From the NCBI GenBank assembly GCA_965235115.1, contig OZ249438.1, positions 40,548,001-40,612,000 of the forward strand: 64,000 bases of DNA, given 5' to 3'. The notes under the pieces were generated by a model, which saw nothing but the letters and a program-made list of their open reading frames with translations, was not told where the DNA came from and searched no databases. Shown piece after piece: positions 12,173 through 60,695 of this stretch. This stretch comes from Laetmonice hystrix (taxonomy: Eukaryota). A program made the position numbers and the translations under genes. Positions within the stretch are counted from its first letter, which is position 1, and each line of letters begins with the position of its first letter.

Positions 12173-13102
12173 ATGAAGGGTTCCAGGACGACTAGCCGGG
12201 CGGTGTCGGCGCCGGTACGGACCGTCGTGTTGGATAGGTCGGACCTGGAGCTCCGCTGTAGCCAGGGACCACTGAACGTGGTCGGTCTGACAGCCAAGAT
12301 CCTCCGCAACATTGACTTGCCCAGGATGAGGGCCAAGCGTCTCCGACACAAACAACCCTCCCTCACCGACCTCCTCCAGGCGAAGGGGACGGTCCTCACA
12401 CAGGAGGACGCCGCGGGAGGATTCGTCACCGTGTCCCCACAGAAACCGGCAGTCCCTGTCATCAAGGACATGGTCACGAAACAAAAACCAGGAGTTTTAT
12501 CTGAGCAACTACCGGCTGAGTACATGAAGGAGTTAACAGAGTACATTAAGAAAGGGAAGTTAGATAGTGATGATAGCGGAGCGTCCTCAGGGACTATCAC
12601 CTCCTCAGACAAGGACAGCAGTGGCAGCAGTCACACACAGAGTTCTCCAGCATCCTCCAGGAGCACGGACGCTGAGGATGACCTGGAGGATGACGGAGGG
12701 TTCAGTGAGTGCTCCAGGAACGCCAGGAGGAGGAGGACTCTGACCAAAGCCTCCAGTGTTCATGGTGTCGACCCCAAGCCGACGTGTGTGAGATCACACG
12801 ACAGACTCAAAGATAGCGGCGAACTGAAGATGGAACATCTTACCGGGACAGACCTGGGGCCGACCCGGGGTGCGGTCCGCCACCCCCGGCCGCCTCGACC
12901 CCATGGCAGGGTTCTCCCTGATTATAAACCGGGATCTAAACGTAAGGGTACCAACCGGCCCCCGACTGCCCGCAGACCCGACCCTCTGACCACCTCAGAC
13001 AGCCAGGATGATGCCGGCTTTCTTTCTTCTTCTTCCACAGGGCGGAGGGTGAGACGGAATCGGAACGGGATGAGGGACGTCAACCAAGACGTCGACAATA
13101 TG
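12173..13102 (+). CDS. Large coding exon (310 aa, mostly disordered, S/D/R-rich); probable alternative first exon of the ASPP gene
   Basis: 930-nt non-repetitive open frame from ATG 12173 (in-frame stop at 12146) to ATG|gtgagt at 13102/13103, phase 0. Coding-like composition. I found no acceptor compatible with the phase-1 end of the upstream ASPP exon. Assignment to ASPP is inferred from position, strand and phase. Confidence 0.65.
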
Positions 13103-13756
13103 GTGAGTACGAAACCTTTACTCACCGGGAAATGGTGGCTTTAACATAATGGATTTATACAGTCACGACTTCCTGATCATGTTGTCTCACTCGGGAAATC
13201 ATTAAGGTATTAAAAAACAGTGTTTGAGCGTCCTTCCAAATAGCCGAAAGAGTCGACTTGTTTTGATGCCGCCTCTTACAGGTTGACATGGAAACACGCC
13301 AGACGCCCCCAGTGAAAACCTGCAGAGTGACTTTAACCAGCCAAATCAACCACTGTATTCCTTTGGGTATTTTGGAATGGTTCCTGATTTTATACATACC
13401 TGGGCAAAAGGCATTAGTAATGAGGTTGAAGGTGTCCTTGACAGTGATTGATGAAACTTAGAGAGATGAAACACTAAGGTAAGCTACAGGTCAGTACAGG
13501 TAAGTTACAGGTGTTTCCATAACTGTGACTTATATCTGAAGTAATCAATTCAGTTGAATTGCGCAGAACACTTACAGCTTGGGGCAATGAAGAAATTCCT
13601 TATATATAAACTGTTCAAAAGATATTCTATCTTTGGGAAGGCTTTCTTGGGGCGTAGTGAATGCGTGCGTTCTGTTGTTCTCTTGCCAAGGGACTTTCCC
13701 AATCTGTCCTGGAACCAGAACTAAAGATAAACAGAAGTGGGTGGATTCTATCTTTG

Positions 13757-14346
13757 TTAGGGAGTCAAAGAAGTGAAAGCTTTTCATCTGCCAGATTACC
13801 ACAGATTCTTAGGGAGTCAAAGAAGTGAATACTTATCATCTATCAGATTACCACAAATCATATTCTTAGGGAGTCAAAGAAGTCAAAACTTATCATCTAT
13901 CAGATTACCACAAATCGTATTCTTAGGGAGTCAAAGATGTCAAAACTTATCATCTATCAGATTACCACAAATCATATTCTTAGGGAGTCAAAGATGTCAA
14001 AACTTATCATCTATCAGATTACCACAAATCGTATTCTTAGGGAGTCAAAGAAGTCAAAACTTATCATCTATCAGATTACCACAAATCATATTCTGAGGGA
14101 GTCCAAGAAGTCAAAACTTATCATCTATCAAATTACATGTACCACAAATCAGATTCTTAGGGAGTCAAAGAGGTCAAAACTTATCATCTATCAGATTACC
14201 ACAAATCATATTCTTAGGGAGTCAAAGAAGTCAAAACTTATCATCTATCAGATTACCACAAATCAGATTCTTAGGGAGTCCAAGAAGTCAAAACTTATCA
14301 TCTATCTACCACAAATCATATTCTCAGGGAGTCAAAGAAGTGAAAT
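13757..14346. repeat. 57-bp minisatellite, about 10 copies
   Basis: Unit ATCTATCAGATTACCACAAATCATATTCTTAGGGAGTCAAAGAAGTCAAAACTTATC; gives 19-aa periodic ORFs. Confidence 0.96.
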
Positions 14347-14529
14347 TACCACAATCAGATGTGGCCTTCAATCCACCCCGCTACAGCCAATATCTGTAAC
14401 CATCCCTATCTCTATTCTAATCCCCATCCCATCCCATAATATTTGTACATGACTTTAAGGTGGCTATTATCTGATGACGTAACCGTGAGAGCCTCCTCTA
14501 TCGATAAAATTGATAGATAAGTCAATTAG

Positions 14530-14725
14530 GGGTACGGTGAGACAGGTGCCCGGCGTGGGGTCAGGTATGGTGGGAGATCAGGGTTCTCCACAGGTAACTA
14601 AGTACGGTGAGACAGAAGGTGCCCAGTGTGGGGTCAGGGTTCTCCACAGGTAACTCGGTATGGTGAGACAGGTGCCCAGTGTGGGGTCAGGTATGGTGGG
14701 AGGTCAGGGCTCTCCACAGGTGAGA
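14530..14725. repeat. Degenerate ~55-70-bp repeat, 3 copies, each containing CTCCACAG|GT
   Basis: Direct reading. Confidence 0.75.
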
Positions 14726-15671
14726 CATGTCTGACAATAAAGAGATGACCCTCTATTGTCAGTGAATGTCAGGTGGGTTGGGCTTGGACCACCCGGCATG
14801 CGTGAATCACACCCCACTCGGTGAATTGACACCCCAAACCATAACGGGGTATCCAGTCACACCCCGAAATCTTGACAGGGGGATTCTTTCACACCCCGGG
14901 CCTGGCAGGGTAATTAAACACCACCCCAAACCTCTAGGTAATCTTATCACGTCTAGAATCTTGGCAGATAATGTAATGAGTGTTAAAAAACACGAAGATC
15001 ATATTGTTTGGCCTCTGGCGGTGGTATAGTATTAAAAGAAAATATCTCGGGTGCCGCCAACTTTCGGTATGATTCCCATCGGAAGGAGAGACGTCATTTT
15101 TTCTTGGAATATTTTCTAAGAAGCGAAAAGGAAATGAAGTGACAATTGCCTGTGGACATTAACAGTGATGAAATATTCATAGAATGAATCACTTATGGGA
15201 CCTAGGATCAAACGATGCGTGGACCCACCAACCCAGGAATTCCTCACTGCTGTCTGGGACTTTGTCATTATGGGTCCGGTAATGAGCGCTCGCCCCGCCC
15301 CCTGGGGAGAAACCAACACATTACAGAGACAGTGAGTGACTGACCACTCGATGTGGGCCTCCATGTCCCGGCGGCCTGCTGCGGGCCTCGTAATATGAAG
15401 GTGAGCGTTGAGGTAACCGCCATGCAGGTGGGCGGGGGTGGGGGGGGTACTCCCAGGTAATCCCACCTGGTACAACCCTAAGGTCCGTTACCTTTGATTT
15501 CCACAGGTATAGCGACGTACCAGGCCACATGGGGTGGAGTGATACAAATAGAAAAGAATAAATAATTTGAAGTTCAAAGCAATGTCCTTTTAATGGCGCC
15601 CATCGCGTCATGAAAATGTTCACCTATGTCCGTTTAAATTGTGTGATGCGCGGGCATGTAGGAGGCGGCCT

Positions 15672-16447
15672 GACCCAGGTGGTGGGTCAGTGAGTCTGAC
15701 CGGCCGCCTTAGGTCGTGTAGGACCCAGGGGGTGGGTCAGTGACGGCCGCCTCAGGCCGTGCAGGACCCAGGGGGTGGGTCAGTGAGTCTGAACGGCCGC
15801 CTCAGGCCGTGTAGGACCCAGGGGGTGGGTCAGTGAGTCTGAACGGTCGCCTCAGGTCGTGTAGGACCCAGGGGGTGGGTCAGTGAGTCTGAACGGCCGC
15901 CTCAGGCCGTGTAGGACCCAGGGGGTGGGTCAGTGAGTCTGAACGGCCGCCTCAAGCCGTGCAGGACCCAGGGGGTGGGTCAGTGAGTCTGAACGGCCGT
16001 GCAGGACCCAGGGGGTGGGTCAGTGAGTCTGAACGGCCGTGCAGGACCCAGGGGGTGGGTCAGTGAGTCTGAACGGCCGTGCAGGACCCAGGGGGTGGGT
16101 CAGTGAGTCTGAACGGCCGTGCAGGACCCAGGGGGTGGGTCAGTGAGTCTGAACGGCCGTGCAGGACCCAGGGGGTGGGTCAGTGAGTCTGAACGGCCGC
16201 CTCAGGCCGTGCAGGACCCAGGGGTGGGTCAGTGAGCCTTAGGCCGTGAAGGACCCAGGGGGTGGGTCAGTGAGTCTGAACGGCCGCCTCAGGCCGTGCA
16301 GGACCCAGGGGGTGGGTCAGTGACGGCCGCCTCAGGCCGTGCAGGACCCAGGGGGTGGGTCAGTGAGTTTGAACGGCTGCCTCAGGCCGTGCAGGACCCA
16401 GGGGGTGGGTCAGTGAGTTTGAAAGGCCGCCTCAGGCCGTGCAGGAC
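15672..16447. repeat. 50/40-bp GC-rich minisatellite
   Basis: Unit GGACCCAGGGGGTGGGTCAGTGAGTCTGAACGGCCGCCTCAGGCCGTGYA, with a central run of 40-bp deletion variants. Confidence 0.97.
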
Positions 16448-19400
16448 AACTAACCGTTTCCAGGTTTCCGTGAATACGTTAAACACATAATTGAGGCCCT
16501 CGTGACCAGCACATTGACCAGGTCGCTGGAACAACCTGACACTCATTAAGTCACGTGTGGATATGACTCATGCCAGAAAAATAATTTTAAAGTACCCTTT
16601 TAAGAACTTGCATTTGAGTTTTGGTTATTTATCATGTCATTTGATGATTTCATGATATATCATGAAATGGGCTCCAAGGAGTTTCAAAATCGGATGTATA
16701 TGCGCCTGATCAAAGTAAAAAATCTTGAATACACAAACCAAAATAATCATATATATTAATGTCCAAGTGGCCTGTGTCGGTACTGAGTCTGCAGCTTACA
16801 GTAGTTAAGATCAGGTGTTGCGCAGTTCGTACCTGTCACCTGACACCTATTATCATGGTCATGTTCGCACCTGGAAGTATTTACTTATCAATGTCAGCAG
16901 TTCGGAGTCCACCTTGGATGTAATACCTGTTATAACACACCACCACTTAACAGTGCCCGAGCATGGGACAACTGGCGTCAGCTATAGTAACGTGAAAAAG
17001 TCGCCAGTCATGTCAATAGTTGTTTCTGGGTAACTGTCGTTTGGTGGTGAGTGGGATGAGACAGGATGACCATTGTGGTCACAGTGTGACGGAATGTGTG
17101 ACATTGGACGAGAATGGCAAACCACAATAGGTTCGCGTTCAGCGCACGCTAGTTTTGACTTCAAACTCAACGCCGCTGCCACTTGCATAAGAGCCGACAC
17201 TTCCGAACTGTCAGAAGCAATTTGAAGAAGAAATTGGAGATGTTGAAGGGTTAGGAGCACTTTGTTAGGCGCCTGCTGCTCAATTGTGAGCCATTAACGG
17301 GGTACTTTTAGGTCACTCAAGTGTGACCTTACCTGTGGGCCAAAGTGGTCACACTTGACGCATGGGCCATAAACTGTACGGGTCCTATCTTCATCACCTC
17401 TAACGTGGCAAGGGGAAACTTCTATACGATCATTCCGAATTGTCCCAGAGTTTTGTGGGAGTGTGCTCGTTGAGCTGATGTTTCATTAAACCCCTATGAG
17501 GAGTACATTAATGGCCAGCTTGGAGTACGGCGAGGAGGTCATTGAGCTCTCCGTTATATAAGTACATAGAGATCATGACTGACTGATGTATATACCGGAC
17601 CTTTCATTGCCACGGTAATTATAGCAATATATCTACATTACCAACGTAATCACAGAGCTACGCCTTCATGACCAACGACCTTAGACACGTATAGGAGCAC
17701 AGTTATGTGAGCATTTGGCTAAAATTACTCGTATAATTAAAGACCTTGGCCTGCATCAATGGCCACCAAGAATTTCCGCTTTCAATCAAGCAACCCGAAA
17801 TGGAGATCTTTCTCTCTCTCCAGATTTGTCACACCAAACAAACCAATTCACAGCATTGACCCTGTAACTTGTAACTGACCCTAGGGTACCAGGGTGTAAC
17901 ACTCGACCCAGGGATTGTAGCTTGGTCCGGTCTGTAAGCTGTGACGATGACAAAACTGTCCCAGGAACAGGCCACAACGACCTCCGTTATTCATGGACAC
18001 AACCAGAATGGTAGTTTACTCATTTCAAGAGAAGAAACTGACAATGATGAAGATGTATGGTCCCATCTGATGGCCTCAAAGTACCCATTTAACGCCATGC
18101 GCTAAAAGTCGAAAATTGGTTCAATTATTGTCCGTTTGGATCGTTGCATCTAGGAAAAGAGGGTCAAATGAGCTTTTGACACATATTGCCCTTTTCTCCT
18201 TCGTTTAACCTTGTGTTTGATGTGATATAGGACAATACATTAAACGTTATATCCAATGCCGGATAAGAAATGGATTCGATCTCGTGGTTTGGAATGGACA
18301 GGGGCGGGGCCCCGAACCTCACACACAGAGTTCAACACGGTAGTTTGGGGTTACCTTGAAAACATCAGGAATGCCCAAGGGGTAATTCGGGGTCCTGACC
18401 AGTCTATGCCCCTGCTCCATGCCTGCCTTCATGTTGGCCCTCAATCAGTGCACCCACACGCCCATCTACACCCGCTACGACCTGCCATCATGGGGTCACA
18501 CACCCCACTACTTCATGATGTATGGATCCAAGTGGTCAGAGTATAGATCCTACCGCTTTATGTCAGAAACAACGGTCGTATTGCCCCATGGTCTCACTCC
18601 CACTTAGTGTTGGCAGAGAGGGAAGGATCTCACAGGTAGACCTTGGCGGTCAGAGATACGGTTCGTTCTCTTATGGCGGCAAGTGATAGATAGCGGGAAA
18701 TCCTTGAATACACTGTGGCAGAACTTTGACAAATAATAACAATGGTTCAGTTGTTCCTCTCGGCACAGTCCCGTTGCTCAGCCTGTAAAGGGGAGATTGT
18801 GACATTTTCCGGTCTAGTTTATCCCTGTAAGGTATAAAGATTATTGGGGATTCATTGTTCATCCCTGTAAGGTATAGAGATTATGATCCATTCTCTGGCT
18901 GTCCCCGCGGGGTAAGGATTACATGTGTAGCACCGTCTCTGATTTCCTGACTCCTTTTCACCTTTTTGAAGTCAGATCTTAAAACTTACAGGATAGAGGC
19001 AGTCCTGAATCGAGCGTATAAAGTCAGATACATGTTGTGTATATTATTAATGCTCTTCATATCAGACCCAGGTGAATCGTGCTGTTTCAGCAGATCATGG
19101 TCTCCCTGACGGTCCAGCTGACTCAAGTCCTCAATCTAAAAACGGATTCAGCGAAAAGTTATTTTTCCACCTTACCGACTTGAGAACGACGCAGTACTGG
19201 ACTGTGAAACCGCCTCGTGCTGACCCAGAGGGTGTCAATTGTTGGCAGAACGATCCAGCAAGGAGAAAGATGCATTGTGCTTTGGCACAACACTTGTTAC
19301 TTGCGGCAAGAGTGTGGCCATTGTCCGAGGGTACTGATCGGGGGGGGGGGAGAAGTGAATGAAGTGGTAGTGAAGGTCCTGAGGCCTGTTACCTGACAGG

Positions 19401-19562
19401 TGGCACGAGGTCTGTGGTACATGGATATAGAAACCAGCACTCTAAACGCTTGCATGTTCCAGGGCTCTAAGCTTGTAGGAAGGACATGGGCCCAGTTCGT
19501 AAAAACTTAAGATCTTGCTAAAGCTGATTCGAAACTTACGTTTGATTGGCCGGTGTAAGCAG

Positions 19563-19693
19563 ACCAGCCAATCAGAAGCGTTAAGCTCTGCTTGGAGAGA
19601 GGTTCACCAGCCAATCAGAAGCGTTAAGCTCTGCTTGGAGAGAGGTTCACCAGCCAATCAGAAGCGTTAAGCTCTGCTTGGAGAGAGGTTCAC
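19563..19693. repeat. 43-bp triplication carrying CCAAT boxes
   Basis: ACCAGCCAATCAGAAGCGTTAAGCTCTGCTTGGAGAGAGGTTC x3. Confidence 0.95.
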
Positions 19694-20123
19694 TGGGACA
19701 TGATTCTGGTCCTTCCAGTACTGTTGTTGAAGGCGGACACTAAAGTTTAAAGTATGTGGTCGCGCGTGTGTATGGGAGGGAAGGGGTGATAAAAGAAGCA
19801 GGCCTGCCATTATTTATACAAATTCTCCTGATCTCAGCGAGAGACAAGGCACATGGCAGGTCGGCGTGCCAGCAGAGAGTGAGAAGTAGAAATGTGAAGG
19901 CATTAGCCGGGAGGAAAGTGATACTGTTCTGGTGGCTGAAGTAACGGGAAACCTGATCAGGTGGTAGTTATAGCTGGGTGGCATGTTGGTTGGTTGGTTG
20001 TGGAGTGGGGTGGGGGTTGGTAGGCTGGCGGGGCCGGCGGCAAGCGGAGGGGAGGAGGAGGAGGAGGAGAGGCTGACGTACTCAGTAGTAAGAATTGCAT
20101 CTTTCGCCTCAGTCCGGACGAGT

Positions 20124-20144
20124 ATGGCTGGGCTGTCATGGCAG
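20124..20144 (+). CDS. Candidate short alternative first coding exon (MAGLSWQ)
   Basis: agtATGG start context; CAG|gtgagt donor in phase 0; GC-rich sequence and a CCAAT array upstream. Could be chance given its length. Confidence 0.3.
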
Positions 20145-21669
20145 GTGAGTCACATAAACCGGCTTTGTTTTGGATGTCAAGAAACGGTGTGGATTATCGT
20201 TTATAACGCACGGTCATACAGGCAGGTTTTCATAGCGAGGATCACCACAGTAATGACCAAATTGGAGGATTATTCTGGCTCAATATCGTGGCACAAGTCC
20301 ACGCCAACTGCCCTCTTATATGATGTTGGAAATCAAGAGGCGAGTCCAATCTGGAGCAGTGGTAGGGGTGGCAGGCAGGTGGAGGGGTTGGCGGGAGGAT
20401 TGGGATGTTTCAGGCTTGTCGTGACTTGTACTCGTTGAGCTGGAGGCGAGGCGTACAGGAGAAGTTGGTTGTAGAGGTTCAATCATCATCCCGGAGGTGG
20501 CCATAGCCGCCCGGCAATCTATAAACAAGAGGCGGAGAGCCAGCCTGGCCCGGCCACTGTGCCGAATGCCGCCAGGCGGCGCTGTTTACCCACACCGTCG
20601 GCCCTTCCCTCCAGGTCTACCCCTGCCGACTACAACCGAAATCCTGCCGAGTCTGGGAATGTTTGCAGCAGTCTGTCATCGACCTCTCATTATTAATCTC
20701 ATGGCCGATTGACAATGTTAATATCATCAGGGAGTTATCGGTTATTAACTAACAAAGACGGGGGTTCAGTGTTTGTCTAGATCCCAGTGGTGAGCCTCAT
20801 CTCTGTCCACTCGGTTCACTCGTCCCTGAAGTAAAGTCAGTGCAGTTTGGCATCGTGCCCGGCCCACATGCCATCGGGGGCCGAGGCAGCTGGGTTTGTT
20901 TACCGTAGAGAAGTTACTATCTCACAACTACAAGCAAATCTAGCCTCAAGAAATATCTCAAGCGTTACATCGGTGGTGCAGACAGTATTATCATCAGTGA
21001 GCGATAGTTTCCTGACGAATGATATGGTGATCATTCAGTGTGTGTATGTGCCGGCATGTCGTCTACAGGCATTGGGCGGTGTATTATGTAGCGTACGTAT
21101 ATGTCCAGACAACAGGCCGAGTTCTGAAGTTGAGAAATGGCGTAAAACCTGTGAGAATCTTTTTGTACGACTGATAAGCTGTGAGGTTGGCTCCTGAATA
21201 GTCGTGTGGTGACCTTGAGTGGTCAGTTGAAGGTCACATTTTCAGCGATATGTGCATGAAGTGAGAAATATTTTGTGTGATGAAGGCATATCTCCCGACT
21301 ACCCCACTTTGATCTGTTGGTTTCCTTTGGTCAGTGTAAATTGACCCCGACTGTGTTCAGCGTTTGATTCCGATAAGTCAGCGTCTCAGATCTCAGCAGG
21401 GGGTCCAATACATGGTCAATGTCTTGTTTCCCGTATGTAGGTCGTGGGAGAGTTGTAATGTACGTCATTGGAAATACATACGGCTCTAGCGGCATACTCA
21501 CGTCAGACTGGCGTGTCAAATGACCTACCTCCTGACCCCGCCCAAGTGGTAGTCGGAGCCAACTGCCATAGCAACGGTAGCCATGACATTCTTCTCTTTT
21601 TTTATACTGCGCGCAGTGCATTGGTCGATACAAGTGGGCAGAAGGAGGAGAGTGTAGAGGACACGCCTG

Positions 21670-27401: not shown

Positions 27402-27494
27402 GACTGTAACATGCCCAGATTTAGGTGTGAGACTGGTCTTGATCCCCACAGAGCCTCAGAAAAAGTTCACATAGTATTTTACTGCCGCTAAGGT

Positions 27495-33931: not shown

Positions 33932-33954
33932 TATAACTAACAAGGTTATTAGTC

Positions 33955-34929: not shown

Positions 34930-34980
34930 ATGGATAAGTACCTGTTCCACGGCTACAACATCCTCATAAAACCGGCACAG
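34930..34980 (+). CDS. Candidate alternative first coding exon (MDKYLFHGYNILIKPAQ)
   Basis: gccATGG strong start context; 17 codons rich in C-ending codons; CAG|gtaggt donor in phase 0; CpG-rich ~400 bp upstream. Confidence 0.5.
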
Positions 34981-37049: not shown

Positions 37050-37455
37050 GTTTGACATTCCACCTTTACTTCTTCCAGGCTCTTAAAAAAGGAGGGAATC
37101 CCCGCTGTCTCAAAGAAAGATATTACAAAATGTCTTGAATCTTGTCATTCAACACTTGAAGCTGTATTTTGTAAGGCATTCAAAGGAAAGTAAGCGTGTA
37201 AAAGTGGACATTGAAAGGGTTTTGTGTGTGATAGCAAAAAGATGTGAGATTTGTAGTCGTCGCCATACCTCGCTCTGAGCCGGCCGTCCCACTGGGTCCG
37301 TACAGGGGCCACGGGACACTTTTTAACAGGGGAGAAAGTATATGCTCTGATTACTGCTCTGAAAAACAATCCTCTCCATGGGGGCTGCAGCGTGAAGGGC
37401 TCACCTGGCGGAGCTAGGCGGGACCGTAGTCAAACAGGACAGGTGTGTGAACGAC

Positions 37456-38269
37456 AGTCTACGTCTACTCCAGGGGGCGGGTACCTGTCTACGTCTACGT
37501 CTACGTCTACTCCAGGGGGCGGGTACCTATCTACGTCTACTCCAGGGGCGGGTACCTGTCTACGTCTACGTCTACTCCAGGGGGCGGGTACCTGTCTACG
37601 TCTACGTCTACTCCAGGGGGCGGGTACCTGTCTACGTCTACTCCAGGGGGCGGGTACCTGTCTACGTCTACGTCTACTCCAGGGGGCGGGTACCTGTCTA
37701 CGTCTACTCCAGGGGGCGGGTACCTGTCTACGTCTACTCCAGGGGCGGGTACCTGTCTACGTCTACTCCAGGGGGCGGGTACCTGTCTACGTCTACTCCA
37801 GGGGGCCGGTACCTGTCTACGTCTACTCCAGGGGGCGGGTACCTGTCTACGTCTACTCCAGGGGGCGGGTACCTGTCTACGTCTACTCCAGGGGGCCGGT
37901 ACCTGTCTACGTCTACTCCAGGGGGCGGGTACCTGTCTACGTCTACTCCAGGGGGCCGGTACCTGTCTACGTCTACTCCAGGGGGCCGGTACCTGTCTAC
38001 GTCTACTCCAGGGGGCGGGTACCTGCTGTCTACGTCTACTCCAGGGGGCGGGTACCTGTCTACGTCTACTCCAGGGGGCGGGTACCTGTCTACGTCTACT
38101 CCAGGGGGCGGGTACCTGTCTACGTCTACTCCAGGGGGCGGGTACCTGTCTACGTCTACTCCAGGGGGCGGGTACCTGTCTACGTCTACTCCAGGGGGCG
38201 GGTACCTGTCTACGTCTACTCCAGGGGGCGGGTACCTGTCTACGTCTACTCCAGGGGGCGGGTACCTGT
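37456..38269. repeat. 30-bp G-rich minisatellite, about 26 copies, with CTACGT slippage at the 5' end
   Basis: Unit CTACGTCTACTCCAGGGGGCGGGTACCTGT; explains both 300-aa ORFs. Confidence 0.98.
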
Positions 38270-39447
38270 CACCATCTCACCTCGGAGGACCTGTTGACGG
38301 GGACGTGTTGACGGGGACATGTTCACGGGGACGTGTTCACGGTGTGTAAAGGAAAGTTTTGAAATGACGGAGAGTAACAGGAATACGTGAGAGATTTTGA
38401 AGACTGCCGTATGGAGGACTGACGTGGGATTGCTGAGGTCCGCCTTGATGTAGTGTACGGTGAGTAGGGACCACAAACTGACCCAGTGTTACGCGAGGAG
38501 AAGCAGGCGAGTGTTGTTTGGTTCTGTGTATAGTGAACCAGTTCTCGAGGAATCATATTGTAATCGGTTGTCAGTTTGAATTGTCCTAGAAGTAACGGGT
38601 CGCATGTGTTGGACTCACTCGGTAATATCGATAAGGCTAACCAAGGTGATCTCAACTCCCTACTCAGTACATGTGTATAGGTACACCCAAACATACTTAC
38701 CAACGTCTGGTGGTAAATATTGGTCAAGGTTTACACTGGTCTACTCTGTGAAAACACAGAGTAACTTTTGCTGGCAGTTAGTACTGGCAGGTTATGTAAC
38801 TGATACTGTTGTATAAGTTAGTACTGGCAGGTTATGTAACTGATACTGTTGTATAAATTACATGATGAAAGGTGTATGATTATGTAGCTTTCAGCTTTCA
38901 AAATACGTTACTCATTTGTTCTCGGAGTCGTAGACCTAGAAAAAAACTGAATCCCCCCTCCCCGGTCCAAGTCCGAGTGGTTCTGCTGCTCGGGTCTCGA
39001 TCTTGGCCAGCCTGGTGTGTACTGACAGCTTTGACCGTCATTGTTTTCTATCCACGAACTGAGGTACTCTTGGCACAGGTCCCCAGGGTTGTTGTGGCAG
39101 TAGTGCTCGTGACATGGCCGAGTGGTCGTTATGCATTGTCATAGGGACTAAACACAGTCTCATTGATTAGAGGAAGAAATACTGACTGGAGGGTCAGTCC
39201 ATGATAGGAGATCTGACGAGTTAAACTCCCCAGGTATTGGCCCAGTCATTGGTCCATGGTGTTGGTCAACAGGATACTTGACCCCACAACCGTCTGTAAA
39301 CACCTGAAAATTAACCAAACTGTCATCTGAGATAGACTTTGCCAAACCATGCCTGGATTTCCCTTTTTATCTAGATAAATATATTTGTATGTATATCTGT
39401 AGGGCTGGATCAGTATGCGAGGATAGAACCCCCTATCATTAATCTAT

Positions 39448-40172
39448 GTTAGAGACTGTGGGCTGAGACTGTGATATTATTGGTTGAGTAGGACATTACG
39501 CCCCAGTCCATCTGTTAGAGACTGTGGGCTGAGACGGTGATATTATTGGTTGAGTAGGACATTACGCCCCAGTCCACCTGTTAGAGACTGTGGGCTGACA
39601 GTCCACCTGTTAGAGACTGTGGGCTGAGACTGTGATATTATTGGTTGAGTAGGACATTACGCCCCAGTCCACCTGTTAGAGACTGTGGGCTGAGACGGTG
39701 ATATTATTGGTTGAGTAGGACATTACGCCCCAGTCCATCTGTTAGAGACTGTGGGCTGAGACGGTGATATTATTGGTTGAGTAGGACACTACGCCCCAGT
39801 CCACCTGTTAGAGACTGTGGGCTGAGACTGTGATATTATTGGTTGAGTAGGACGCCCCAGTCCACCTGTTAGAGACTGTGGGCTGAGACGGTGATATTAT
39901 TGGTTGAGTAGGACATTACGCCCCAGTCCACCTGTTAGAGACTGTGGGCTGAGACGGTGATATTATTGGTTGAGTAGGACATTACGCCCCAGTCCACCTG
40001 TTAGAGACTGTGGGCTGAGACGGTGATGTTATTGGTTGAGTAGGACATTACGCCCCAGTCCACCTGTTAGAGACTGTGGGCTGAGACGGTGATATTATTG
40101 GTTGAGTAGGACATTACGCCCCAGTCCACCTGTTAGACTTAGAGACTGTGGGCTGAGACGGTGATATTATTG
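39448..40172. repeat. 66-bp minisatellite, about 11 copies
   Basis: Unit CTGTTAGAGACTGTGGGCTGAGACGGTGATATTATTGGTTGAGTAGGACATTACGCCCCAGTCCAC. Confidence 0.97.
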
Positions 40173-40713
40173 GGACCCCCTAGTTCACCTATGGCCCAAT
40201 CATTGACTGCGTGCCGAGTGTGAGGAATGTGACGGTCCGCTTCCCGCCACTTCCTGGATTGTTTACCGGAATCTGTAATCAGCGTCTCCCGGCCAGGTAC
40301 ACGGCCAGGTACACGGCCAGGTACACGTACAGACACGGTCGGGCTGGGGTTTTCAAATAACGCCAGTCACTTACTCGAGTCGTAAAGATGCCACAGACTG
40401 ACTGGAATCGTAAATAGGTGTAGGGACATGAGGCTAACGTCAATATCTAGGACCGAGTCAATATTTGGCACCAGGTGCTCCCCCTACACTGTTATTATAT
40501 CTATGTGTGTATGTGTGCCAGGACTCCCGGGTTCCGAGGTGGTGGGGGGGGGGGGCAGTTTGAGGGCAATGGGCCTTTCAACCACCAGGGCGTTCCCAGT
40601 GACCGACGACACAGGACGAGAATTTCTGGGACATGAAAACGTTTTGTATGAGGCTGAGACTGAAAGAACTATGAACTGATATAGGCCAGAGTAAGCATCA
40701 CGGGAAGAGATAT

Positions 40714-41719
40714 AGGCTAGACATGAGACTGGTTGTAAGGGACACCAAAGATAAAGGCTAGACATGAGACTGGTTGTAAGGGATACCAAAGATAAAAGCT
40801 AGACATGAGACTGGTTGTAAGGGATACCAAAGATAAAGGCTAGACATGAGACTGGTTGTAAGGGACACCAAAGATAAAAGCTAAACATGAGACTGGTTGT
40901 AAGGGACACCAAAGATAAAGGCTAGACATGAGACTGGTTGTAAGGGACACCAAAGATAAAGGTTAGACATGAGACTGGTTGTAAGGGACACCAAAGATAA
41001 AAGCTAAACATGAGACTGGTTGTAAGGGACACCAAAGATAAAGGCTAGACATGAGACTGGTTGTAAGGGACACCAGAGATAAAGGCTAGACATGAGACTG
41101 GTTGTAAGGGACACCAGAGATAAAGGCTAGACATGAGACTGGTTGTAAGGGACACCAAGGATAAAGGCTAGACATGAGACTGGTTGTAAGGGACACCAAA
41201 GATAAAGGCTAGACATGAGACTGGTTGTAAGGGACACCAAAGATAAAAGCTAGACATGAGACTGGTTGTAAGGGATACCAAAGATAAAGGCTAGATATGA
41301 GACTGGTTGTAGTGGACACCAAAGATAAAGGCTAGACATGAGACTGGTTGTAAGGGACACCAAAGATAAAGGCTAGACATGAGACTGGTTGTAAGGGACA
41401 CCAAAGATAAAGGCTAGACATGAGACTGGTTGTAAGGGACACCAAAGATAAAGGCTAGACATGAGACTAGTTGTAAGGGACACCAAAGATAAAGGCTAGA
41501 CATGAGACTGGTTGTAAGGGACACCAAAGATAAAGGCTAGACATGAGACTGGTTGTAAGGGACACCAGAGATAAAGGCTAGACATGAGACTGGTTGTAAG
41601 GGACACCAAAGATAAAGGCTAGACATGAGACTGGTTGTAAGGGATACCAACGATAAAGGCTAGACATGAGACTGGTTGTAAGGGACACCAAAGATAAAGG
41701 CTAGATATGAGACTGGTTT
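40714..41719. repeat. 41-bp minisatellite, about 24 copies
   Basis: Unit GGCTAGACATGAGACTGGTTGTAAGGGACACCAAAGATAAA. Confidence 0.98.
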
Positions 41720-42723
41720 TATTGGACACTAAAGATAACGACATGTATAGTAAAGAAAAGTCCTTAGATGAGGAGAATTGATTGCTTTCAGCCGTCCGGT
41801 GGTTTAGATTGAGTACATTGGTAATCTGAAAGGACGTTATCGTTGAGAATCCAGTGGAAGAGCTAGACTTACTGGTACCCCGGTACATGTGAAATACTAC
41901 CGTGTTACATTTCCATAATGGATGGGTCGGTTACACGGATAGATGATACATAAAATTTGAAGTCAGTCGTACACAGTATGAATGCATTAGCATTTCCAAG
42001 GTATGCAAATAATTTGTAATTTAAAATTCTGATTGAAGTCAGGCTCAAAAAATATGACAAAGAATATTATTTGTAAATAGTTCCTCGTGCTTGTACACGT
42101 ACTTCCAGTGAGTCTCACAGTTGTGATAAATCTATTCCATGGTTAATTCATTTCTTGACTGTCGGAGCATTGCTTTCAGTCATTAAATTCTTTGATCTCT
42201 TCAATTTGATTTTTGAAAAGATTGCTCATGGAGTTTTTGTTGTTCTCCTTGGCTGGCTGCAGAGGTTGTTTACCGAGATTTACAGAGAAAAGTCGGGCAG
42301 CCAGTCGTTGGAAGCCTTATGAATGCAATCAGTGAGAAGTCACGGAGGACCCTGAAGTGGTCTAGAGTGGCGTGTCCGTGATTTTGATTGGTGGCTGCTA
42401 GTTGAGTGTGGAGACAGACCTAGCCATGTTTATCAAGCTGTCTGTACTTGGATGTAGTTCAGGGTTTGCTGCACACTAACCGACTCATGTACAGGCTCAA
42501 CTCGTCGGATTCCATCATTGTCACCACCTCATGTATTTATGTAGTCAGTTTTCGGAATCAAATTCTCAGGACTATCTTTGACATCTGGTTGGAGAGTTCC
42601 AGCTATGATAGAAGTCGTACATGGGAAACTCCAGTGTCAGATAGCTGGTGACTGGTCAACTTCTCCTGCAGTCGGTAAGCATCACCCCTGACATTTTAAA
42701 ATTCGCTGATATATCAGCATTGA

Positions 42724-43822
42724 TATTTAACCTCATGTTTGGTCCAAGGGACGAGGATATTTGACCTCATGATTGGTCCAAGGAACGAGAATATTTAACG
42801 TCATGATTGGTCCAAGGGACGAGGATATTTAACCTCATGATTGGTCCAAGGGACGAGGATATTTAACCGCATGATTGGTCCAAGGGACAAGGATATTTAA
42901 CCTCATGATTGGTCCAAGGGACGAGGATATTTAACCTGATTGGTCCAAGGGACAAGGATATTTAACCTCATGATTGGTCCAAGGGACAAGGATATTTAAC
43001 CTCATGATTGGTCCAAGGGACGAGGATATTTAACCTCATGATTGGTCCAAGGGACGAGGATATTTAACCTTATGATTGGTCCAAGAGACGAGGATATTTA
43101 ACCTCATGATTGGTCCAAGGGACGAGGATATTTAACCTCATGATTGGTCCAAGGGACGAAGATATTTAACCTCATGATTGGTCCAAGGGACGAGGATATT
43201 TAACCTCATGATTGGTCCGAGGGACGAGGATATTTAACCTCATGATTGGTCCACGGGACGAGGATATTTAACCTCATGATTGGTCCAAGGGACGAGGATA
43301 TATGATTGGTCCAAGGGACGAGGATATTTAACCTCATGATTGGTCCAAGGCACGAGGATATTTAACCTCATGATTGGTCCAAGAGACGAGGATATTTAAC
43401 CTCATGATTGGTCCAAGAGACGAGGATATTTAACCTCATGATTGGTCCAAGGGACGAGGATATTTAACCTCATGATTGGTCCAAGGCACGAGGATATTTA
43501 ACCTCATGATTGGTCCAAGAGACGAGGATATATGATTGGTCCAAGAGACGAGGATATTTAACCTCATGATTGGTCCAAGGGACGAGGATATTTTACCTCA
43601 TGATCGGTCCAAGGGACGAGGATATTTAACCTCATGATTGGTCCATGGGACCAGGGTATTTGACCTCATGATTGGTCCAAGGGGCGAGGATATTTAACCT
43701 GATTGGTCCAAGGGACGAGGATATTTAACCTCATGATTGGTCCAAGGGACGAGGATATTTAACCTCATGATGGGTCCAAGGGACGAGGATATTTAACCTC
43801 ATGATTGGTCCAAAGGACGAGG
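42724..43822. repeat. 34-bp minisatellite, about 32 copies
   Basis: Unit ATATTTAACCTCATGATTGGTCCAAGGGACGAGG. Confidence 0.98.
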
Positions 43823-44186
43823 TAATTCAAGAATTATTTGAACGGAAACCGGTAGTTTTATGGCGCATATATGAAGTGAATAATTTGTAAAATGTCTCAA
43901 TCCATTGTATACTAAATACATATAGACATGCTTACATTAATGGCTGATCTGATAAAATATCAGATAGTAAAGTGGATGTAAATGAATTCAATTCTGGAGC
44001 TGTCACTCAGTGCCATTATTACCGGCGCCCCTGAGGCCAGTCTAGGGTTGATTACTGACTTTGTGTCGGTCTCCGGTTGGCCGTGCAATCATTGACAGAC
44101 TTAATTCATAAAGTCAAAGTGGCGTGAAAGTGGAACAAGATGAACAACTAACCAACCCCCACGGGCATCCGTAGTATCGGTGGGAA

Positions 44187-44496
44187 GATCTGTGGTTTGA
44201 TGGTATTAGAAATAGTCGATCTGTGGTTTGATGGTATTAGAAATAGTCGATCTGTGGTTTGATGGTATTAGAAATAGTCGATCTGTGGTTTGATGGTATT
44301 AGAAATAGTCGATCTGTGGTTTGATGGTATTAGAAATAGTCGATCTGTGGTTTGATGGTATTAGAAATAGTCGATCTGTGGTTTGATGGTATTAGAAATA
44401 GTCGATCTGTGGTTTGATGGTATTAGAAATAGTCGATCTGTGGTTTGATGGTATTAGAAATAGTCGATCTGTGGTTTGATGGTATTAGAAATAGTC
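44187..44496. repeat. 31-bp minisatellite, 10 identical copies
   Basis: Unit GATCTGTGGTTTGATGGTATTAGAAATAGTC. Confidence 0.98.
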
Positions 44497-46464
44497 ATAC
44501 CATGACTTTTCAGTTTATTAATCTGGTTATGCTGCCATGGAAAGTTAGACACGATGGTTGTCTTCAGGGCTGCAGGTTCCCAGCCTGGCCGGCACAAAGC
44601 TGATTGGTCAGGCCAAGTGTCCTGTCAGTCCGAGTGAAAACTGTGTCATTGTGATTACCGTCATGACCTTGTATGACCTCTATTAATCTGATAAGGATGT
44701 CTCTGTGAGTTTTGTTAACATGCTGCTGCACTTCGGGTAAGAGTAGAATGTCTGTCTCTGACGCTAGTCTTCTCAGGTTTAGATTCTTTTCACAGGCTCG
44801 TCGCGATGCCCGCCTGGATTTTTGGAGGGTCATGGTTAGAGGTCAAGGTCTAAGGTCAGGGCAGAGATCATTAATCAAATTTGGGTCTCGGTGACCTTCT
44901 GAATGCGACAAAACTATATGGCACGGCCTAAAGGCATAAGAAAATGAGTCTTGCTAACAAAAGGCCAAGAGTTGCAGACGTTGGAAGAAGCATAGGAAGG
45001 TCTTGCCAACAGCAGAATGAGAGGCAGAGATCTTGCGGAGGCCGTTTCTCCCCCCCCCCCCCCTCCAAATCAGAGTCAGTGGTCCTTTAATGGGACCTGC
45101 AGCCCCACCTGGTGGTGTTCAAGGGACCAATCAGCAGATCTGACACTAAACGGTACCAGAGAGTCATTGAGAGATAAGAGGGCCCAGGAGGTACTTCTCT
45201 CAGCAATCCTGGCCGACCTTATCACCTCCGACTCATGTCTCCTGACGTAAGGCCCATCGAGTAGTTGATATCAGATCACAGATAGTTCCGACCTCCAGCC
45301 GCCAGACGTCGCTTTGGTCAGCAGAGGTCTGGTGATCAGCCGGCGTTCATTACGGTGACCCGGATGAGGAGGTTGATGTTGATTGGCCGCGTTGATTGAT
45401 TGATCTTGAACTAAGATATATTTGATGCTGACAAGGACCCATGGTGACGTGCCCCCACTGTGAGGTAATCGTTGAGTAACGAGGTGTGTTCAGTGTCAAG
45501 GACCACACGCCAGCGTATACATACAGCGTTCTTCTATTGCCTAGGAGATCCGTCAGCTGGGCTGCGATCGAGAAAATGTAGAGTGCTTTTCACCAAACTT
45601 AGGATCTTCCATCGAATCCATGTCGAAATTACTGCTGTCGTAATTAGGAGTTGTCTGCACCATTATCAGATTTTTTTTTATGAAATTCAGTCTAAACGGT
45701 GAGACTAATGAATGTACCATGCCTTACAAATGCTGACTTGAATAGCGGCCCGGGCAAGGTGAGGTTTGGTTTGAGCCGTGGTTATCGTTAGTGAGAACGA
45801 ATCTGACGAGGACGGGTCATAAAGAACCACGTAGTGTGTATTGTCACCTACAGATGGCGCCCGACACCACCCAGTGTGAGGGCGGCCGGATGGGGAACCC
45901 GTTACCATGACACCCGACCCATTCTACACCCCTCACCTTCCCTCAATGGGAGGGGTCACAGCGTGGGACACCCACCATCGGCCAGGTACCTGTAGGGTCA
46001 GGTGTAAACATACCCCACCCCACACAGACACCCCCTGAATGACGGCACTCACCCTGGGGGTAATTAAAGCAGTTTGTGATCCTGGCTGGGCCGTTGTACA
46101 GCTCAGCGGGGGTGGTCACGGCATAGTGTTCCTGTCAGTTGTCATGGCTATCAGTAACCCACACTAATTTGACCGTTCGCCAGGTTCCCAGGTCATTATG
46201 TAAGCAAAGTCTGAGAGGTTGGCGCTTCCCAGGCTGTTTTGCACAATGAGAGTGAAAGAATGTGCTCACAGTCACAGGACAGTTCAGTAGTACTTAGCAA
46301 AGCAGCACGTTGGCAACAGCTTTAAGTTGACTAAGGCAGAAGATAACAGCAACAAAAGAAAGAAAATTGTGCTAAAAGAGACATCGTGAGCCGATATCCA
46401 CATTAGATATCATGGAGTCGATGATGATCTTTGAGAGAAAATCCAATAAAGGTCCCTACAGTTC

Positions 46465-46515
46465 AGTGTCTCTCTCTCTCCCTCTGTCTCTCTGTCTCTG
46501 TCTCTGTCTCCGTGT
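46465..46515. repeat. (CT)n/(CTGTCT)n microsatellite
   Basis: Direct reading. Confidence 0.9.
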
Positions 46516-47040
46516 AAGGGAGTGACCAGTCCATAGAACACTGGAAATCATCGGACTTCTTCAGTTTCTAGATTTTGTTTTAGGATTTCTACAAATATTC
46601 TGTGTGTATAACTTATGCCCTGGTTGAGTCGTGCTGTGTGGTGTGTTGGCCAGTAGTTGTAGGTGGATACCAGGATAGTTAGAGATATAGTTATAGATAT
46701 TTTACCTCAACCACTAGTAAAATGTTAATGCCAGTGGTCTGATGTTACACATTCCTGATGCTGTGGATCCTGGACCGTTACCGTAGACTCGTGTCATGAT
46801 GTAGTGCCTATTGTGTTTACAATAAAGCATTATGAAGTGTGCGTGTGGAGTTGTGTCATACATGCCGGTCACATATAGAATCTTGAACGTCTGACTAACA
46901 AAGTTGTTATAATTGTAAATGTTTTCCAATTCAGTCCGTCAGAACGAAGTACCGGTACTCGAGCCAGATCTATCTAAGATTGTCGGTGTATATTCTGTGT
47001 GTGTATAACTTAGCGTGTATAAATTAATTTGTTTGTAATC

Positions 47041-47082
47041 GTTTTATAATTTCCGTATGATTTTCTGTACTTTCAGGTGAGT
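47041..47082 (+). other. Juxtaposed 3'/5' splice-site motif (candidate recursive splice site)
   Basis: gttttataatttccgtatgattttctgtactttcAG|GTGAGT: long pyrimidine tract and CAG immediately followed by a consensus donor; junction 47076/47077. Confidence 0.45.
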
Positions 47083-47435
47083 ATCTCATCTCAACACGTG
47101 GTGTTGATTGTGTGTGACCGATTGATTGGATTATACCTGGGAATTCCTGGAATTACTAGGATTTTACTGCGCAGACAAGGAGAAAATGGAGCCACCATTC
47201 AGATAAGTCAGAAATGAAAATCGTATTCTGTCTTCTTCCTGTTGTTCCGAATGTGGTTTGATCAAGGAAAGGGGGAAAAGGATGGCTGGGTCCCGGTGGC
47301 TGGAGATTGAGTAATGATTGAGTGGTTTTGCTCAATTAATGACTGAATTAAAACGTTGAAACCAGAACCAATGGATTGAATCGGAGATATCAGAGCCTGA
47401 GGATTCACTGATTTCAGAGCCAGAGACTTGGATAT

Positions 47436-47746
47436 CAGAGACTTGAACTATGTGGATTTACAAAATGATAGTCAGAGATTTGAACAATGTGGATTTACAA
47501 AATGATAGTCAGAAACTTGAACAATGGGGATTTACAAAATGATAGTCAGAGACTTGAACAATGGGGATTTACAAAATGATAGTCAGAGACTTGAACAATG
47601 GGGATTTACAAAATGATAGTTAGAGACTTGAACAATGGGGGTTTACAAAATGATAGTTAGAGACTTGAACCATGTGAATTTACAAAATGATAGTCAGAGA
47701 CTTGAACAATGGGGATTTACAAAATGATAGTTAGAGTCTTGAACCA
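47436..47746. repeat. 37-bp minisatellite, about 8 copies
   Basis: Unit AGAGACTTGAACAATGGGGATTTACAAAATGATAGTC. Confidence 0.96.
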
Positions 47747-48569
47747 AGTAAGAGCCACAACCTCCCCATATCAAAGACTTACGAATAATACATAATATCA
47801 CAGCTTACCAACATTTATGAGATTCGCTATTTCATGAAAAGCTGATCTAGCTCCACCTTGACCCAGCTGGACGGTAGCAGCTGTGTCGGTGTACACATGA
47901 AAGGAACACACCCACTGCTGCTCCTCCTGCCACACACCGCCCTCGGCCATGGAGAGAGACAGCTCTCAACGCACACTACCAGAGGGCGCCCCTGGGGGCC
48001 TAAAGTTCACTGGGAATTAAAAAGGGTCAAAGGGGAGGCGGGGGAGGGGGCCTAGACACGAGTTTTGTAAATTAAAAGATATATATATCTCAGATTGTAT
48101 TGTAGGTGATTGCTAGAACGAAAAAATAATAACTCTTTTACCGCATGATATACACCTCAGCCTGTCATAGCCAGGGAGTGTCTAGTCATGTAGGTGTTTG
48201 GGAAGAATGGCTGCCGGTCGGAAACTGGTCAGCAAGTATTCCATTCAGATTTTACGGATCCTATTTTACCTGGTTTATTGAAGGAACGTTTGTGAAAGGA
48301 ATGATACGTGAATAGTGACCGATATACCGCACCTTGGTTGGAGGGAGAGGGTTGTCTGGTACCATGTATGGCAGAATAAATAGGATTAAACGTGTGGGCG
48401 GGATGACGTGGGTCAACAGGGATCGAGAGACAAGGAATGGTGGGTTGAGATTACCATGTTGATCCGTTTACCTCCATTAACCAGGACCGATAGATTGGTT
48501 ACCCGTCTTATTCAGTCCGTGTCCGTGTGTCTCTGATTGAAACCGGTATGTTGATACTGAGCCACCGGC

Positions 48570-48720
48570 CCCGGGCCATTGCCCACCGGCGGCCCGCCCC
48601 CGGAGACCGGCCGGCCGGGTCCCGTCCCGTCGGTCGGTCAGTGACGGACTGACTGTACGGCTGAGGAACCCGTACAGCGGCCTGCTCAAACAGCGCCCGT
48701 GGCGCCACCTAGTATGCAGG
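48570..48720 (+). promoter_or_regulatory. CpG/GC-rich patch upstream of the 48866 exon; possible internal promoter or 5' UTR
   Basis: Very high GC and CpG density (CCGGCCCCGGGCC..CCGGCGGCCCGCCCCCGG). Composition only. Confidence 0.3.
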
Positions 48721-48865
48721 TCAGATCCTAGCCTGGCGTGGGTCTGTGCGGCAGTCGGCTGGGACTCAGCCAGAGGAGCGAGGTCAAGCGAGGTTGGCCT
48801 GAGCTCCGACCAGCGGGACTGAGCACAAGTTGAACGAGTGGAATTAGTGATTGATTAACACACAG

Positions 48866-48900
48866 GATCGATGAGGTATGAGGACATCGACAACATGATG
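48866..48900 (+). CDS. Putative ASPP linker exon, 35 nt ([G/R]SMRYEDIDNMM), with an internal in-frame ATG at 48871
   Basis: ttgattaacacacag|GATCGATGAGGTATGAGGACATCGACAACATGATG|gtgagt. Phase 1 to 0, the connector needed after exon 4067-4186 or the microexon. The acceptor resembles those of the confirmed exons (tgatt..cag). Confidence 0.55.
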
Positions 48901-60691: not shown

Positions 60692-60695
60692 TGGG

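What the first reader, a model, noticed from the sequence alone, without database searches (positions are those of the whole stretch)
12173..48900. Best candidate system: an array of alternative first exons giving ASPP swappable N-termini
Seen: four + strand segments in unique DNA each begin with an ATG, end at a GT donor in phase 0 and have GC/CpG-rich or CCAAT-rich upstream DNA. They are 12173-13102 (310 aa), 20124-20144 (MAGLSWQ), 34930-34980 (MDKYLFHGYNILIKPAQ) and 48871-48900 (MRYEDIDNMM). The canonical path (3584, 4067, 9742, 48866) also ends in phase 0. Known: variable-first-exon cassettes exist in plectin, UGT1A and clustered protocadherins, and N-terminally truncated ASPP2 isoforms exist in mammals. 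Inference: up to five N-termini could join one common coiled-coil/ankyrin/SH3 body beyond the window, by promoter choice.
Basis: inference. Interest (0 to 1): 0.75.

Follow-up and report, generated by a model that had tools for sequence, protein, structure and literature searches.

The report
ASPP gene: one real alternative N-terminus
This invertebrate ASPP gene very probably makes two protein versions, one with the usual Ras-association domain and one that swaps it for a lineage-specific 289-residue start; the proposed array of five swappable starts is not supported, so this is ordinary gene architecture.

Summary
All four ATG-to-GT segments exist at the stated coordinates, in single-copy DNA. 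The common coiled-coil exon lies 21 kb beyond the window (window coordinate 85256) and starts in phase 0, as predicted.

Only one segment has real support. The 310-codon ORF 12173-13102 is coding. A relative carries a 322-aa homologue (E 5e-48) downstream of its ASPP RA exon on the same contig. Of 18 allelic variants listed in the ORF, 16 are synonymous (P about 2e-8).

Its last 62 bases (13041-13102) follow a strong internal acceptor. They are the orthologue of the normal ASPP exon that precedes the coiled coil (GRRxRRNG motif, as in Lingula). The long ORF is a 5'-extended version of that exon, probably a first exon driven by a CpG-rich intronic promoter near 12.0 kb.

Segment 48866-48900 is a plausible but unproven third option. 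Segments 20124 and 34930 are at chance level. No RNA data were available, so no junction was observed.

RA-less ASPP isoforms are already annotated in many invertebrates and known in mammals.

The parts
3584..3731 (+). ASPP RA (ubiquitin-like) domain exon, first part; phase-1 donor
   Evidence: Pfam PF21801 ASPP2-like_RA E 3.5e-21. Matches Lingula ASPP residues 2-58. Splice sites read.
4067..4186 (+). ASPP RA domain exon, second part; phase-1 donor (GACG|gtatgt)
   Evidence: PF21801 E 1.2e-9, profile positions 52-80 of 80. Lingula residues 54-92. Splice sites.
9742..9759 (+).
   Evidence: The 4186 donor joins either 13041 or 48866 in frame without it. It has no homology support.
11500..12172 (+). 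Candidate intronic promoter and 5' leader of the long RA-less isoform
   Evidence: CpG o/e 1.06, in the top 5% of 500-nt windows. CCAAT at 11771 and 12004, TGACGTC at 11934, and no ATG from 11967 to 12172. A CACCTG-containing 14-mer is repeated 3.6 times at 12100-12149. Inferred only; no start-site data.
12173..13102 (+). 310-codon coding exon: a 289-residue lineage-specific N-terminal extension read in frame into exon 3A
   Evidence: Homologue P0001 (322 aa, E 4.7e-48) is the only real hit among 1.84 billion representatives; alignment. In the relative it lies downstream of an ASPP RA ORF on the contig that also carries the big exon, Ank and SH3. Of 18 listed allelic variants, 16 are synonymous and at codon position 3. 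Single copy.
13020..13040 (+). Internal 3' splice site: a run of about 17 pyrimidines followed by acag, which also encodes FLSSSST
   Evidence: Sequence read. The acceptor is phase 1, matching the phase-1 donor at 4186.
13041..13102 (+). Exon 3A: the canonical ASPP exon between the RA domain and the coiled coil; phase 1 in, phase 0 out
Evidence: The splice model translates in frame.
20124..20144 (+). ATG-to-GT segment (MAGLSWQ); chance level
   Evidence: Strong Kozak context and CAG|gtgagt donor, but such combinations are expected by chance. CpG o/e 0.70. Upstream ATGs at 19853, 19892 and 19983. The nearby CCAAT boxes lie in a 43-mer repeated three times at 100% identity.
34930..34980 (+). ATG-to-GT segment (17 codons); chance level
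   Evidence: Good Kozak context and CAG|gtaggt donor, at chance frequency. CpG o/e 0.78. No Pfam hit for the surrounding ORFs.
48201..48700 (+). CpG-rich stretch upstream of exon 3B; possible second internal promoter
   Evidence: CpG o/e 0.995. With 11.5-12.3 kb this is one of only two such peaks in non-repeat DNA of the window.
48866..48900 (+). Candidate exon 3B: weak phase-1 acceptor, phase-0 gtgagt donor, internal ATG at 48871; either an alternative to 3A or a short first exon
   Evidence: In frame from 4186 and into 85256. It cannot follow 3A, because that junction gives a stop. Its last 15 nt match 13 of 15 with 3A, and it ranks 2nd of 813 donors for similarity. Single copy. No conservation or RNA test was possible.

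Best explanation
The window holds the 5' part of the genome's single ASPP gene (PPP1R13B/TP53BP2 family). The standard isoform most likely runs from the RA-domain exons 3584-3731 and 4067-4186 to exon 3A (13041-13102), entered through a strong internal acceptor. It then crosses a 72-kb intron to the phase-0 coiled-coil exon at window coordinate 85256. A second isoform most likely starts at an intronic promoter near 12.0-12.1 kb and begins translation at ATG 12173. It reads 289 new codons straight through that acceptor into exon 3A and uses the same donor at 13102. This replaces the RA domain with a mostly disordered, lineage-specific N-terminus on the same coiled-coil, ankyrin and SH3 body. 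Shown here: the ORF is under purifying selection in this frame up to the donor, it is conserved in position in a relative, and exon 3A is the orthologue of the exon used in other lophotrochozoan ASPPs. Inferred: the transcription start and the 13102-to-85256 junction for the long form. Exon 48866-48900 may be a third, short alternative. Segments 20124 and 34930 are most likely chance.
For: ASPP identity: RA, Ank and SH3 Pfam hits, and exon-by-exon match to Lingula ASPP with no second locus. Common exon in phase 0. ORF is coding: homologue at E 4.7e-48 with blockwise conservation. Same gene context in the relative. 16 synonymous versus 2 nonsynonymous variants, binomial P 1.6e-8, and the two variants just past the donor fall at codon positions 2 and 1. 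Exon 3A orthology. The same architecture, a start codon just upstream of this exon read through its acceptor, appears in RA-less models of Crassostrea virginica X6, Littorina X2 and Sinanodonta. The promoter-like CpG peak and the 208-nt ATG-free leader fit an intronic start.
Against: No RNA evidence at all: the three runs found are DNA contigs of one sample that cross the exon-intron border. The transcription start is inferred only from composition and motifs. The relative's DNA was not retrievable, so neither acceptor conservation nor dN/dS between species could be checked. The variant set comes from one sample, and 4 further variants on the laid stretch were not listed. The mollusc models used for comparison are computational annotations.
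Confidence: 0.65

Rival explanations
1. One reading: an array of up to five alternative first exons (RA path, 12173, 20124, 34930, 48871), each with its own promoter, all spliced to one common exon as in UGT1A, protocadherins or plectin.
For: All donors are phase 0 and the common acceptor is phase 0. All segments are single copy. 20124 and 34930 have strong Kozak contexts and good donors. Three CCAAT boxes lie at 19.57-19.65 kb.
Against: Equivalent ATG-to-donor combinations occur at chance frequency, about 8-10 distinct places per 194 kb on the + strand. There is no CpG peak at 20.0 or 34.8 kb. The CCAAT boxes sit in a 100%-identical three-copy minisatellite in a genome full of minisatellites. 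Upstream ATGs precede 20124. There is no homology to any ASPP N-terminus.
Confidence: 0.05
2. Three N-termini: besides the two forms above, exon 48866-48900 is real. It would be either a mutually exclusive alternative to exon 3A in RA-containing transcripts, or a short first exon giving an RA-less protein that starts at MRYEDIDNMM.
For: It has the same phases as 3A (1 in, 0 out) and is in frame from 4186. Its 3' end resembles 3A, ranking 2nd of 813 donors. A CpG peak lies at 48.2-48.7 kb. Short RA-less N-termini are common in annotated invertebrate ASPPs.
Against: The polypyrimidine tract is weak, the ATG has a pyrimidine at -3, and a uATG lies at 48714. A random donor on the opposite strand scored higher in the similarity test. 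Similarity to other species' peptides is low (scores 9-15). No conservation or RNA test was possible.
Confidence: 0.3
3. The ORF makes a stand-alone protein of about 323 aa. Transcripts would ignore the 13102 donor, read 13 more codons to the stop at 13142 and end at an intronic poly(A) site, so the product shares only 21 residues with ASPP.
For: The read-through tail is short here (13 codons) and in the relative (12 codons). An ATTAAA lies at 13209.
Against: The tail is not conserved beyond the donor triplets. The two variants just past the donor are at codon positions 2 and 1. The ATTAAA is changed by the 13214 A>C allele carried in all three runs. The donor is a consensus gtgagt used by the canonical exon.
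Confidence: 0.12
4. The 310-codon ORF is non-functional: a chance ORF or retained intron sequence.
For: No Pfam family. AlphaFold gives a mean pLDDT of 45. Only one relative carries it.
Against: 16 of 18 listed variants are synonymous. The frame is preserved at 43-51% identity in a relative whose large ASPP exon is itself only 67% identical.
Confidence: 0.02

Closest known systems
RA-less ASPP isoform models in molluscs that start just upstream of the equivalent exon (Crassostrea virginica isoform X6 P0045, Littorina saxatilis X2 P0035, Sinanodonta woodiana P0025)
   Same: The start codon lies in the intron immediately upstream of the GRRxRRNG exon. It is read through that exon's acceptor and joined to the LPxGxDLTLSELQ exon, so the RA domain is absent.
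   Different: Those models add only 1-3 residues before the shared exon. Here 289 conserved, selected codons are added. The mollusc models are automatic annotations.
Delta-N-ASPP2 and BBP/53BP2S of mammalian TP53BP2
   Same: N-terminally altered ASPP isoforms from the same locus. Delta-N-ASPP2 arises from an alternative transcription start site (as summarised in PMC6491939).
   Different: From my own knowledge, the mammalian forms are truncations that add little or no new protein sequence and start further downstream. Here the RA domain is replaced by a new 289-residue region. No homology links the two.
Separate alternative first exon of Mercenaria mercenaria X2 (P0031) and Babylonia areolata X1 (P0051), with the motif EEDWDL...KM
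   Same: A true stand-alone alternative first exon ending in phase 0 and joined to the same common exon.
   Different: No counterpart of that exon was found in 194 kb around this gene.
Variable-first-exon arrays (UGT1A, clustered protocadherins, plectin)
   Same: One common body with a choice of 5' exons by promoter use; phases are compatible here.
   Different: Those arrays have many independently verified first exons, which are paralogous in UGT1A and Pcdh. Here one is well supported, one is doubtful and two are at chance level.

Membership tests
ASPP (PPP1R13B/TP53BP2) family | N-terminal RA/ubiquitin-like domain | tested here: met
   PF21801 E 3.5e-21 and 1.2e-9 on the two exons, which together cover the profile.
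ASPP (PPP1R13B/TP53BP2) family | Conserved coiled-coil region (DLTLSELQEM...) after the RA domain | tested here: met
   The exon at window coordinate 85256 is 79% identical to Lingula ASPP residues 118-212.
ASPP (PPP1R13B/TP53BP2) family | C-terminal ankyrin repeats followed by an SH3 domain | tested here: met
   Ank E 3.9e-9 and SH3_1 E 2.9e-13 on downstream exons in L004. The exon order matches Lingula.
Variable-first-exon array (UGT1A / protocadherin / plectin type) | Three or more independently supported alternative first exons | tested here: not met
   Only 12173-13102 has conservation and selection support. 48871 is doubtful. 20124 and 34930 are at chance level.
Variable-first-exon array (UGT1A / protocadherin / plectin type) | Each first exon has its own promoter | tested here: inconclusive
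   CpG o/e peaks lie only at 11.5-12.3 kb and 48.2-48.7 kb. No start-site data exist.
Variable-first-exon array (UGT1A / protocadherin / plectin type) | All first-exon donors join one common acceptor | not testable with these tools
   Phases are compatible in silico, but the only runs found are DNA.
RA-less / N-terminally altered ASPP isoforms from an internal promoter | An open frame lacking the RA domain and continuous with the ASPP body | tested here: met
   12173-13102 joined to 85256 translates without a stop. The frame through the internal acceptor is kept in the relative.
RA-less / N-terminally altered ASPP isoforms from an internal promoter | The isoform-specific sequence is functional (under selection) | tested here: met
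   16 synonymous versus 2 nonsynonymous variants. Blockwise conservation with P0001.
RA-less / N-terminally altered ASPP isoforms from an internal promoter | Transcription start inside the intron downstream of the RA exons | not testable with these tools
   Indirect only: CpG peak, CCAAT and CRE motifs, and an ATG-free 208-nt leader.

The most novel reading that the evidence does not exclude
A lineage-specific 289-residue disordered module has been recruited as an alternative ASPP N-terminus by extending exon 3A upstream. It carries one confident helix (about residues 111-131), a basic NIDLPRM-RLR-KQPSLTDLL block and an acidic serine cluster containing a DSGxxS-like motif. The same 21 bases would then serve both as the polypyrimidine tract and acceptor for the RA isoform and as codons (FLSSSST) for the long isoform. 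With exon 3B as a second internal start, the single ASPP gene of this animal would produce ASPP1/2-like (RA) and iASPP-like (RA-less) proteins, a split that vertebrates achieve with separate genes.
Probability: 0.3. Interest if true: 0.4.

Novelty: new member of a known kind. Interest (0 to 1): 0.28.

Why it matters
The work corrects the gene model. Exon 13041-13102, not 9742/48866, links the RA domain to the coiled coil. The gene spans more than 93 kb with a 72-kb intron. It also identifies a selected, previously unannotated coding extension that would give an RA-less ASPP with a new N-terminus. In ASPP proteins the RA domain region mediates junctional and Ras-related targeting (general knowledge). 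An isoform that replaces it could redirect the PP1-binding Ank-SH3 body. The same start position just upstream of this exon is annotated in several molluscs, which suggests an old internal promoter in lophotrochozoan ASPP genes. This is useful for annotation and for ASPP/iASPP evolution, but it is not surprising in kind.

Tried and rejected
- RNA evidence: the look-up of sequencing runs returned only three runs of one sample. Read laying showed they are DNA contigs crossing the 13102 border, with no joints. Expression and junctions therefore remain untested.
Intron conservation of 20124, 34930 and 48866 and between-species dN/dS could not be done.
- Family searches: Pfam on the 310-aa ORF and on other ORFs gave nothing real. 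Hits on ORFs over tandem repeats are artefacts. Rfam gave nothing in the window. ESM Atlas gave no hit above 0.80, which is not informative.
- Homologue searches: a second word-based search with the ORF gave only P0001 again. BLASTP of the 289-residue extension against the N-termini of 61 ASPP proteins showed no similarity (E above 1).
- Mollusc EEDWDL first exon: not found in 194 kb around the gene.
- Structure: AlphaFold2 on a 3-sequence alignment gave a low-confidence, mostly disordered model, so no fold search was run.
- Rejected: the 18-nt microexon 9742-9759, as unnecessary and unsupported. Also rejected: inclusion of 3B after 3A, which gives an in-frame stop.
Full report
**Setting.** The window is G000:C3:40548001-40612000 of a 627-Mb, 35-contig animal genome. 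Its introns are packed with minisatellites. The + strand carries the 5' part of an ASPP gene.
- Exons 3584-3731 and 4067-4186 together cover Pfam PF21801 (ASPP2-like RA), E 3.5e-21 and 1.2e-9.
- I fetched 100 kb downstream and 30 kb upstream.
- The coiled-coil exon starts at window coordinate 85256 (L004:1256). It lies behind a ttgttgttgcag acceptor and opens in phase 0 with LPHGVDLTLSELQEM.
- A 905-codon exon follows, then ankyrin and SH3 exons.
- A search of the whole genome with Lingula ASPP maps every part to this locus. Elsewhere it finds only generic ankyrin repeats, so the gene is single copy.
- The nearest named relatives are brachiopod, nemertean and mollusc ASPPs, so the animal is a lophotrochozoan.

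**Checking the observation.** All four segments are as described, are single copy, and translate in frame into the common exon.

Chance is a separate question. In the window's + strand, 6 of 44 GTRAGT sites have an in-frame upstream ATG. On the - strand the figure is 5 of 21. Strong-Kozak ATGs that run open to a good phase-0 donor occur at about 8-10 distinct places on the + strand of the 194 kb examined. Two or three are therefore expected by chance in the 72-kb intron.

**The 310-codon ORF is real coding sequence.** An exhaustive HMMER search of 1.84 billion representatives found one true homologue, P0001 (322 aa, E 4.7e-48).
- P0001 is a prokaryote-style ORF call on an ENA assembly. It reads through the same donor triplets.
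- The alignment shows conserved blocks: LRCS, NIDLPRM..RLR.KQPSLTDLL, IKD.VTK.K, EY..ELTEY..K.K.DS.DSGASSGT.TSSDK.SSG, DDGGFSE, and DDAGFL...GRRVRRNRNG.
- In that species the ORF lies 4.5-6 kb downstream of an ORF hitting ASPP2-like_RA. It sits on the same 257-kb contig as the large exon (67% identical to ours), Ank and SH3.

Within this species, the three public runs are DNA contigs of one sample. They carry allelic differences. Of 18 listed inside the ORF, 16 are at codon position 3 and 16 are synonymous, against 24.6% expected (binomial P 1.6e-8). These span codons 7 to 309. The two variants just beyond the donor (13113, 13124) fall at positions 2 and 1. The coding constraint therefore covers the whole ORF and appears to stop at the donor.

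At 13020-13040 the ORF contains a run of about 17 pyrimidines followed by acag. This makes a phase-1 acceptor at 13041. The RA exon donor at 4186 is also phase 1.
- Joining them gives ...DVDDD-G-RRVRRNRNGMRDVNQDVDNM | LPHGVDL.... This matches the segment that precedes the common exon in Lingula (...LGRRNRRRNGVREVTADNG | LPSGVDL) and in Sinanodonta.
- BLOSUM62 local scores are 49 and 47 for this 21-residue exon.
- The homology-supported canonical path is therefore 3584, 4067, 13041-13102 (exon 3A), 85256.
- The long ORF is exon 3A extended 868 bases upstream, with its own ATG.
- An in-frame TGA at 12146 and the lack of a usable in-frame acceptor argue that it holds the start codon.

**Same layout in molluscs.** RA-less ASPP models of Crassostrea virginica (X6, MRAGQRAQQRNG...), Littorina (X2) and Sinanodonta start one to three codons upstream of the equivalent exon. 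Many invertebrate ASPP entries lack the RA domain. By a crude motif-based classification, 48 of 61 retrieved proteins had no RA-like N-terminus, and most of those have only 6-49 residues before the DLTLSEL motif. In mammals, delta-N-ASPP2 arises from an alternative start site (PMC6491939). The kind of thing is therefore known. What is particular here is the long, selected, lineage-specific extension. It has no similarity to other ASPP N-termini and no Pfam family. AlphaFold2 predicts it mostly disordered: mean pLDDT 45, with one helix at residues 115-131 at pLDDT 70-76 and the exon-3A end at about 71.

**Promoter evidence is indirect.**
- The 500-nt windows with CpG o/e of at least 0.95 in non-repeat DNA of the window lie at 11.5-12.3 kb (1.06) and 48.2-48.7 kb (0.995). 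The median is 0.59.
- Upstream of 12173 there are CCAAT boxes at 11771 and 12004 and a TGACGTC at 11934.
- The 208 bases before the ATG contain no other ATG.

**Exon 48866-48900 (3B).** It has the same phases as 3A and is in frame directly from 4186, so the 18-nt microexon at 9742 is not needed. It cannot follow 3A, because that junction reads GAT CGA TGA. Its last 15 bases match 3A at 13 of 15 positions, and it ranks second of 813 donors for similarity to 3A. However, a donor on the opposite strand ranks first. Its acceptor tract is purine-rich, its ATG has a poor context, and a uATG lies at 48714. I rate it possible (about 0.3), either as a mutually exclusive partner of 3A or as a short first exon.

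**Segments 20124 and 34930.** They have good Kozak contexts and donors but nothing else.
- CpG o/e is 0.70 and 0.78.
- Upstream ATGs precede 20124.
- The CCAAT boxes near 19.6 kb belong to a perfectly repeated 43-mer minisatellite.
- There is no Pfam or homology signal.
- Their frequency matches chance.

**Verdict.** The gene very probably encodes at least two N-termini: an RA form through the internal acceptor, and a 310-residue RA-less start from an intronic promoter. I put ORF translation at about 0.95 and its junction to the ASPP body at about 0.75. It is not an array of five. The main rival for the long ORF is a stand-alone 323-aa product ended by intronic polyadenylation. That rival is weakened by the non-conserved tail and by an allele that destroys the only ATTAAA. 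All transcript-level statements remain inferences, because no RNA data were reachable.

Noticed in passing
L004:1480-1700 (window coordinates about 85480-85700, outside the window): The 3' end of the coiled-coil exon lies in a tandem triplication of about 59 bp. The unit includes the last ~27 exon bases and the CTGA|gtaagt donor, so three identical donors lie in a row and could act as alternative donors.
   Followed up: no
window 12100-12149: A 14-mer (CACCTGAGCGGTCA, containing the E-box CACCTG) is repeated 3.6 times directly upstream of ATG 12173. Contig depth there is about double in all three runs, and contigs break there, which suggests copy-number variation.
   Followed up: partly
window 19563-19693: Three 100%-identical copies of a 43-mer, each carrying a consensus CCAAT box (AGCCAATCAG), lie about 450-550 nt upstream of the 20124 ATG. 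This is either a recent minisatellite expansion or a promoter element.
   Followed up: partly
window 60636-61408: A 51-mer repeated 14 times creates long ORFs on both strands. These give spurious above-threshold Pfam hits (Galanin, HTH_IclR and others), an artefact to ignore in automated annotation.
   Followed up: yes
window 3741-3751 and 48697-48707: The 11-mer TGGCGCCACCT, which resembles a CTCF-type core, occurs just after the first RA exon donor and in the CpG-rich stretch before exon 3B. Two copies of an 11-mer in 64 kb are expected by chance.
   Followed up: no
I did not examine it.
   Followed up: no
window 13103-64000 and on to coordinate 85255: Intron 3 of the gene is about 72 kb long. 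It consists largely of dozens of distinct minisatellite arrays (periods 28-188 nt, up to 2 kb each).
   Followed up: no
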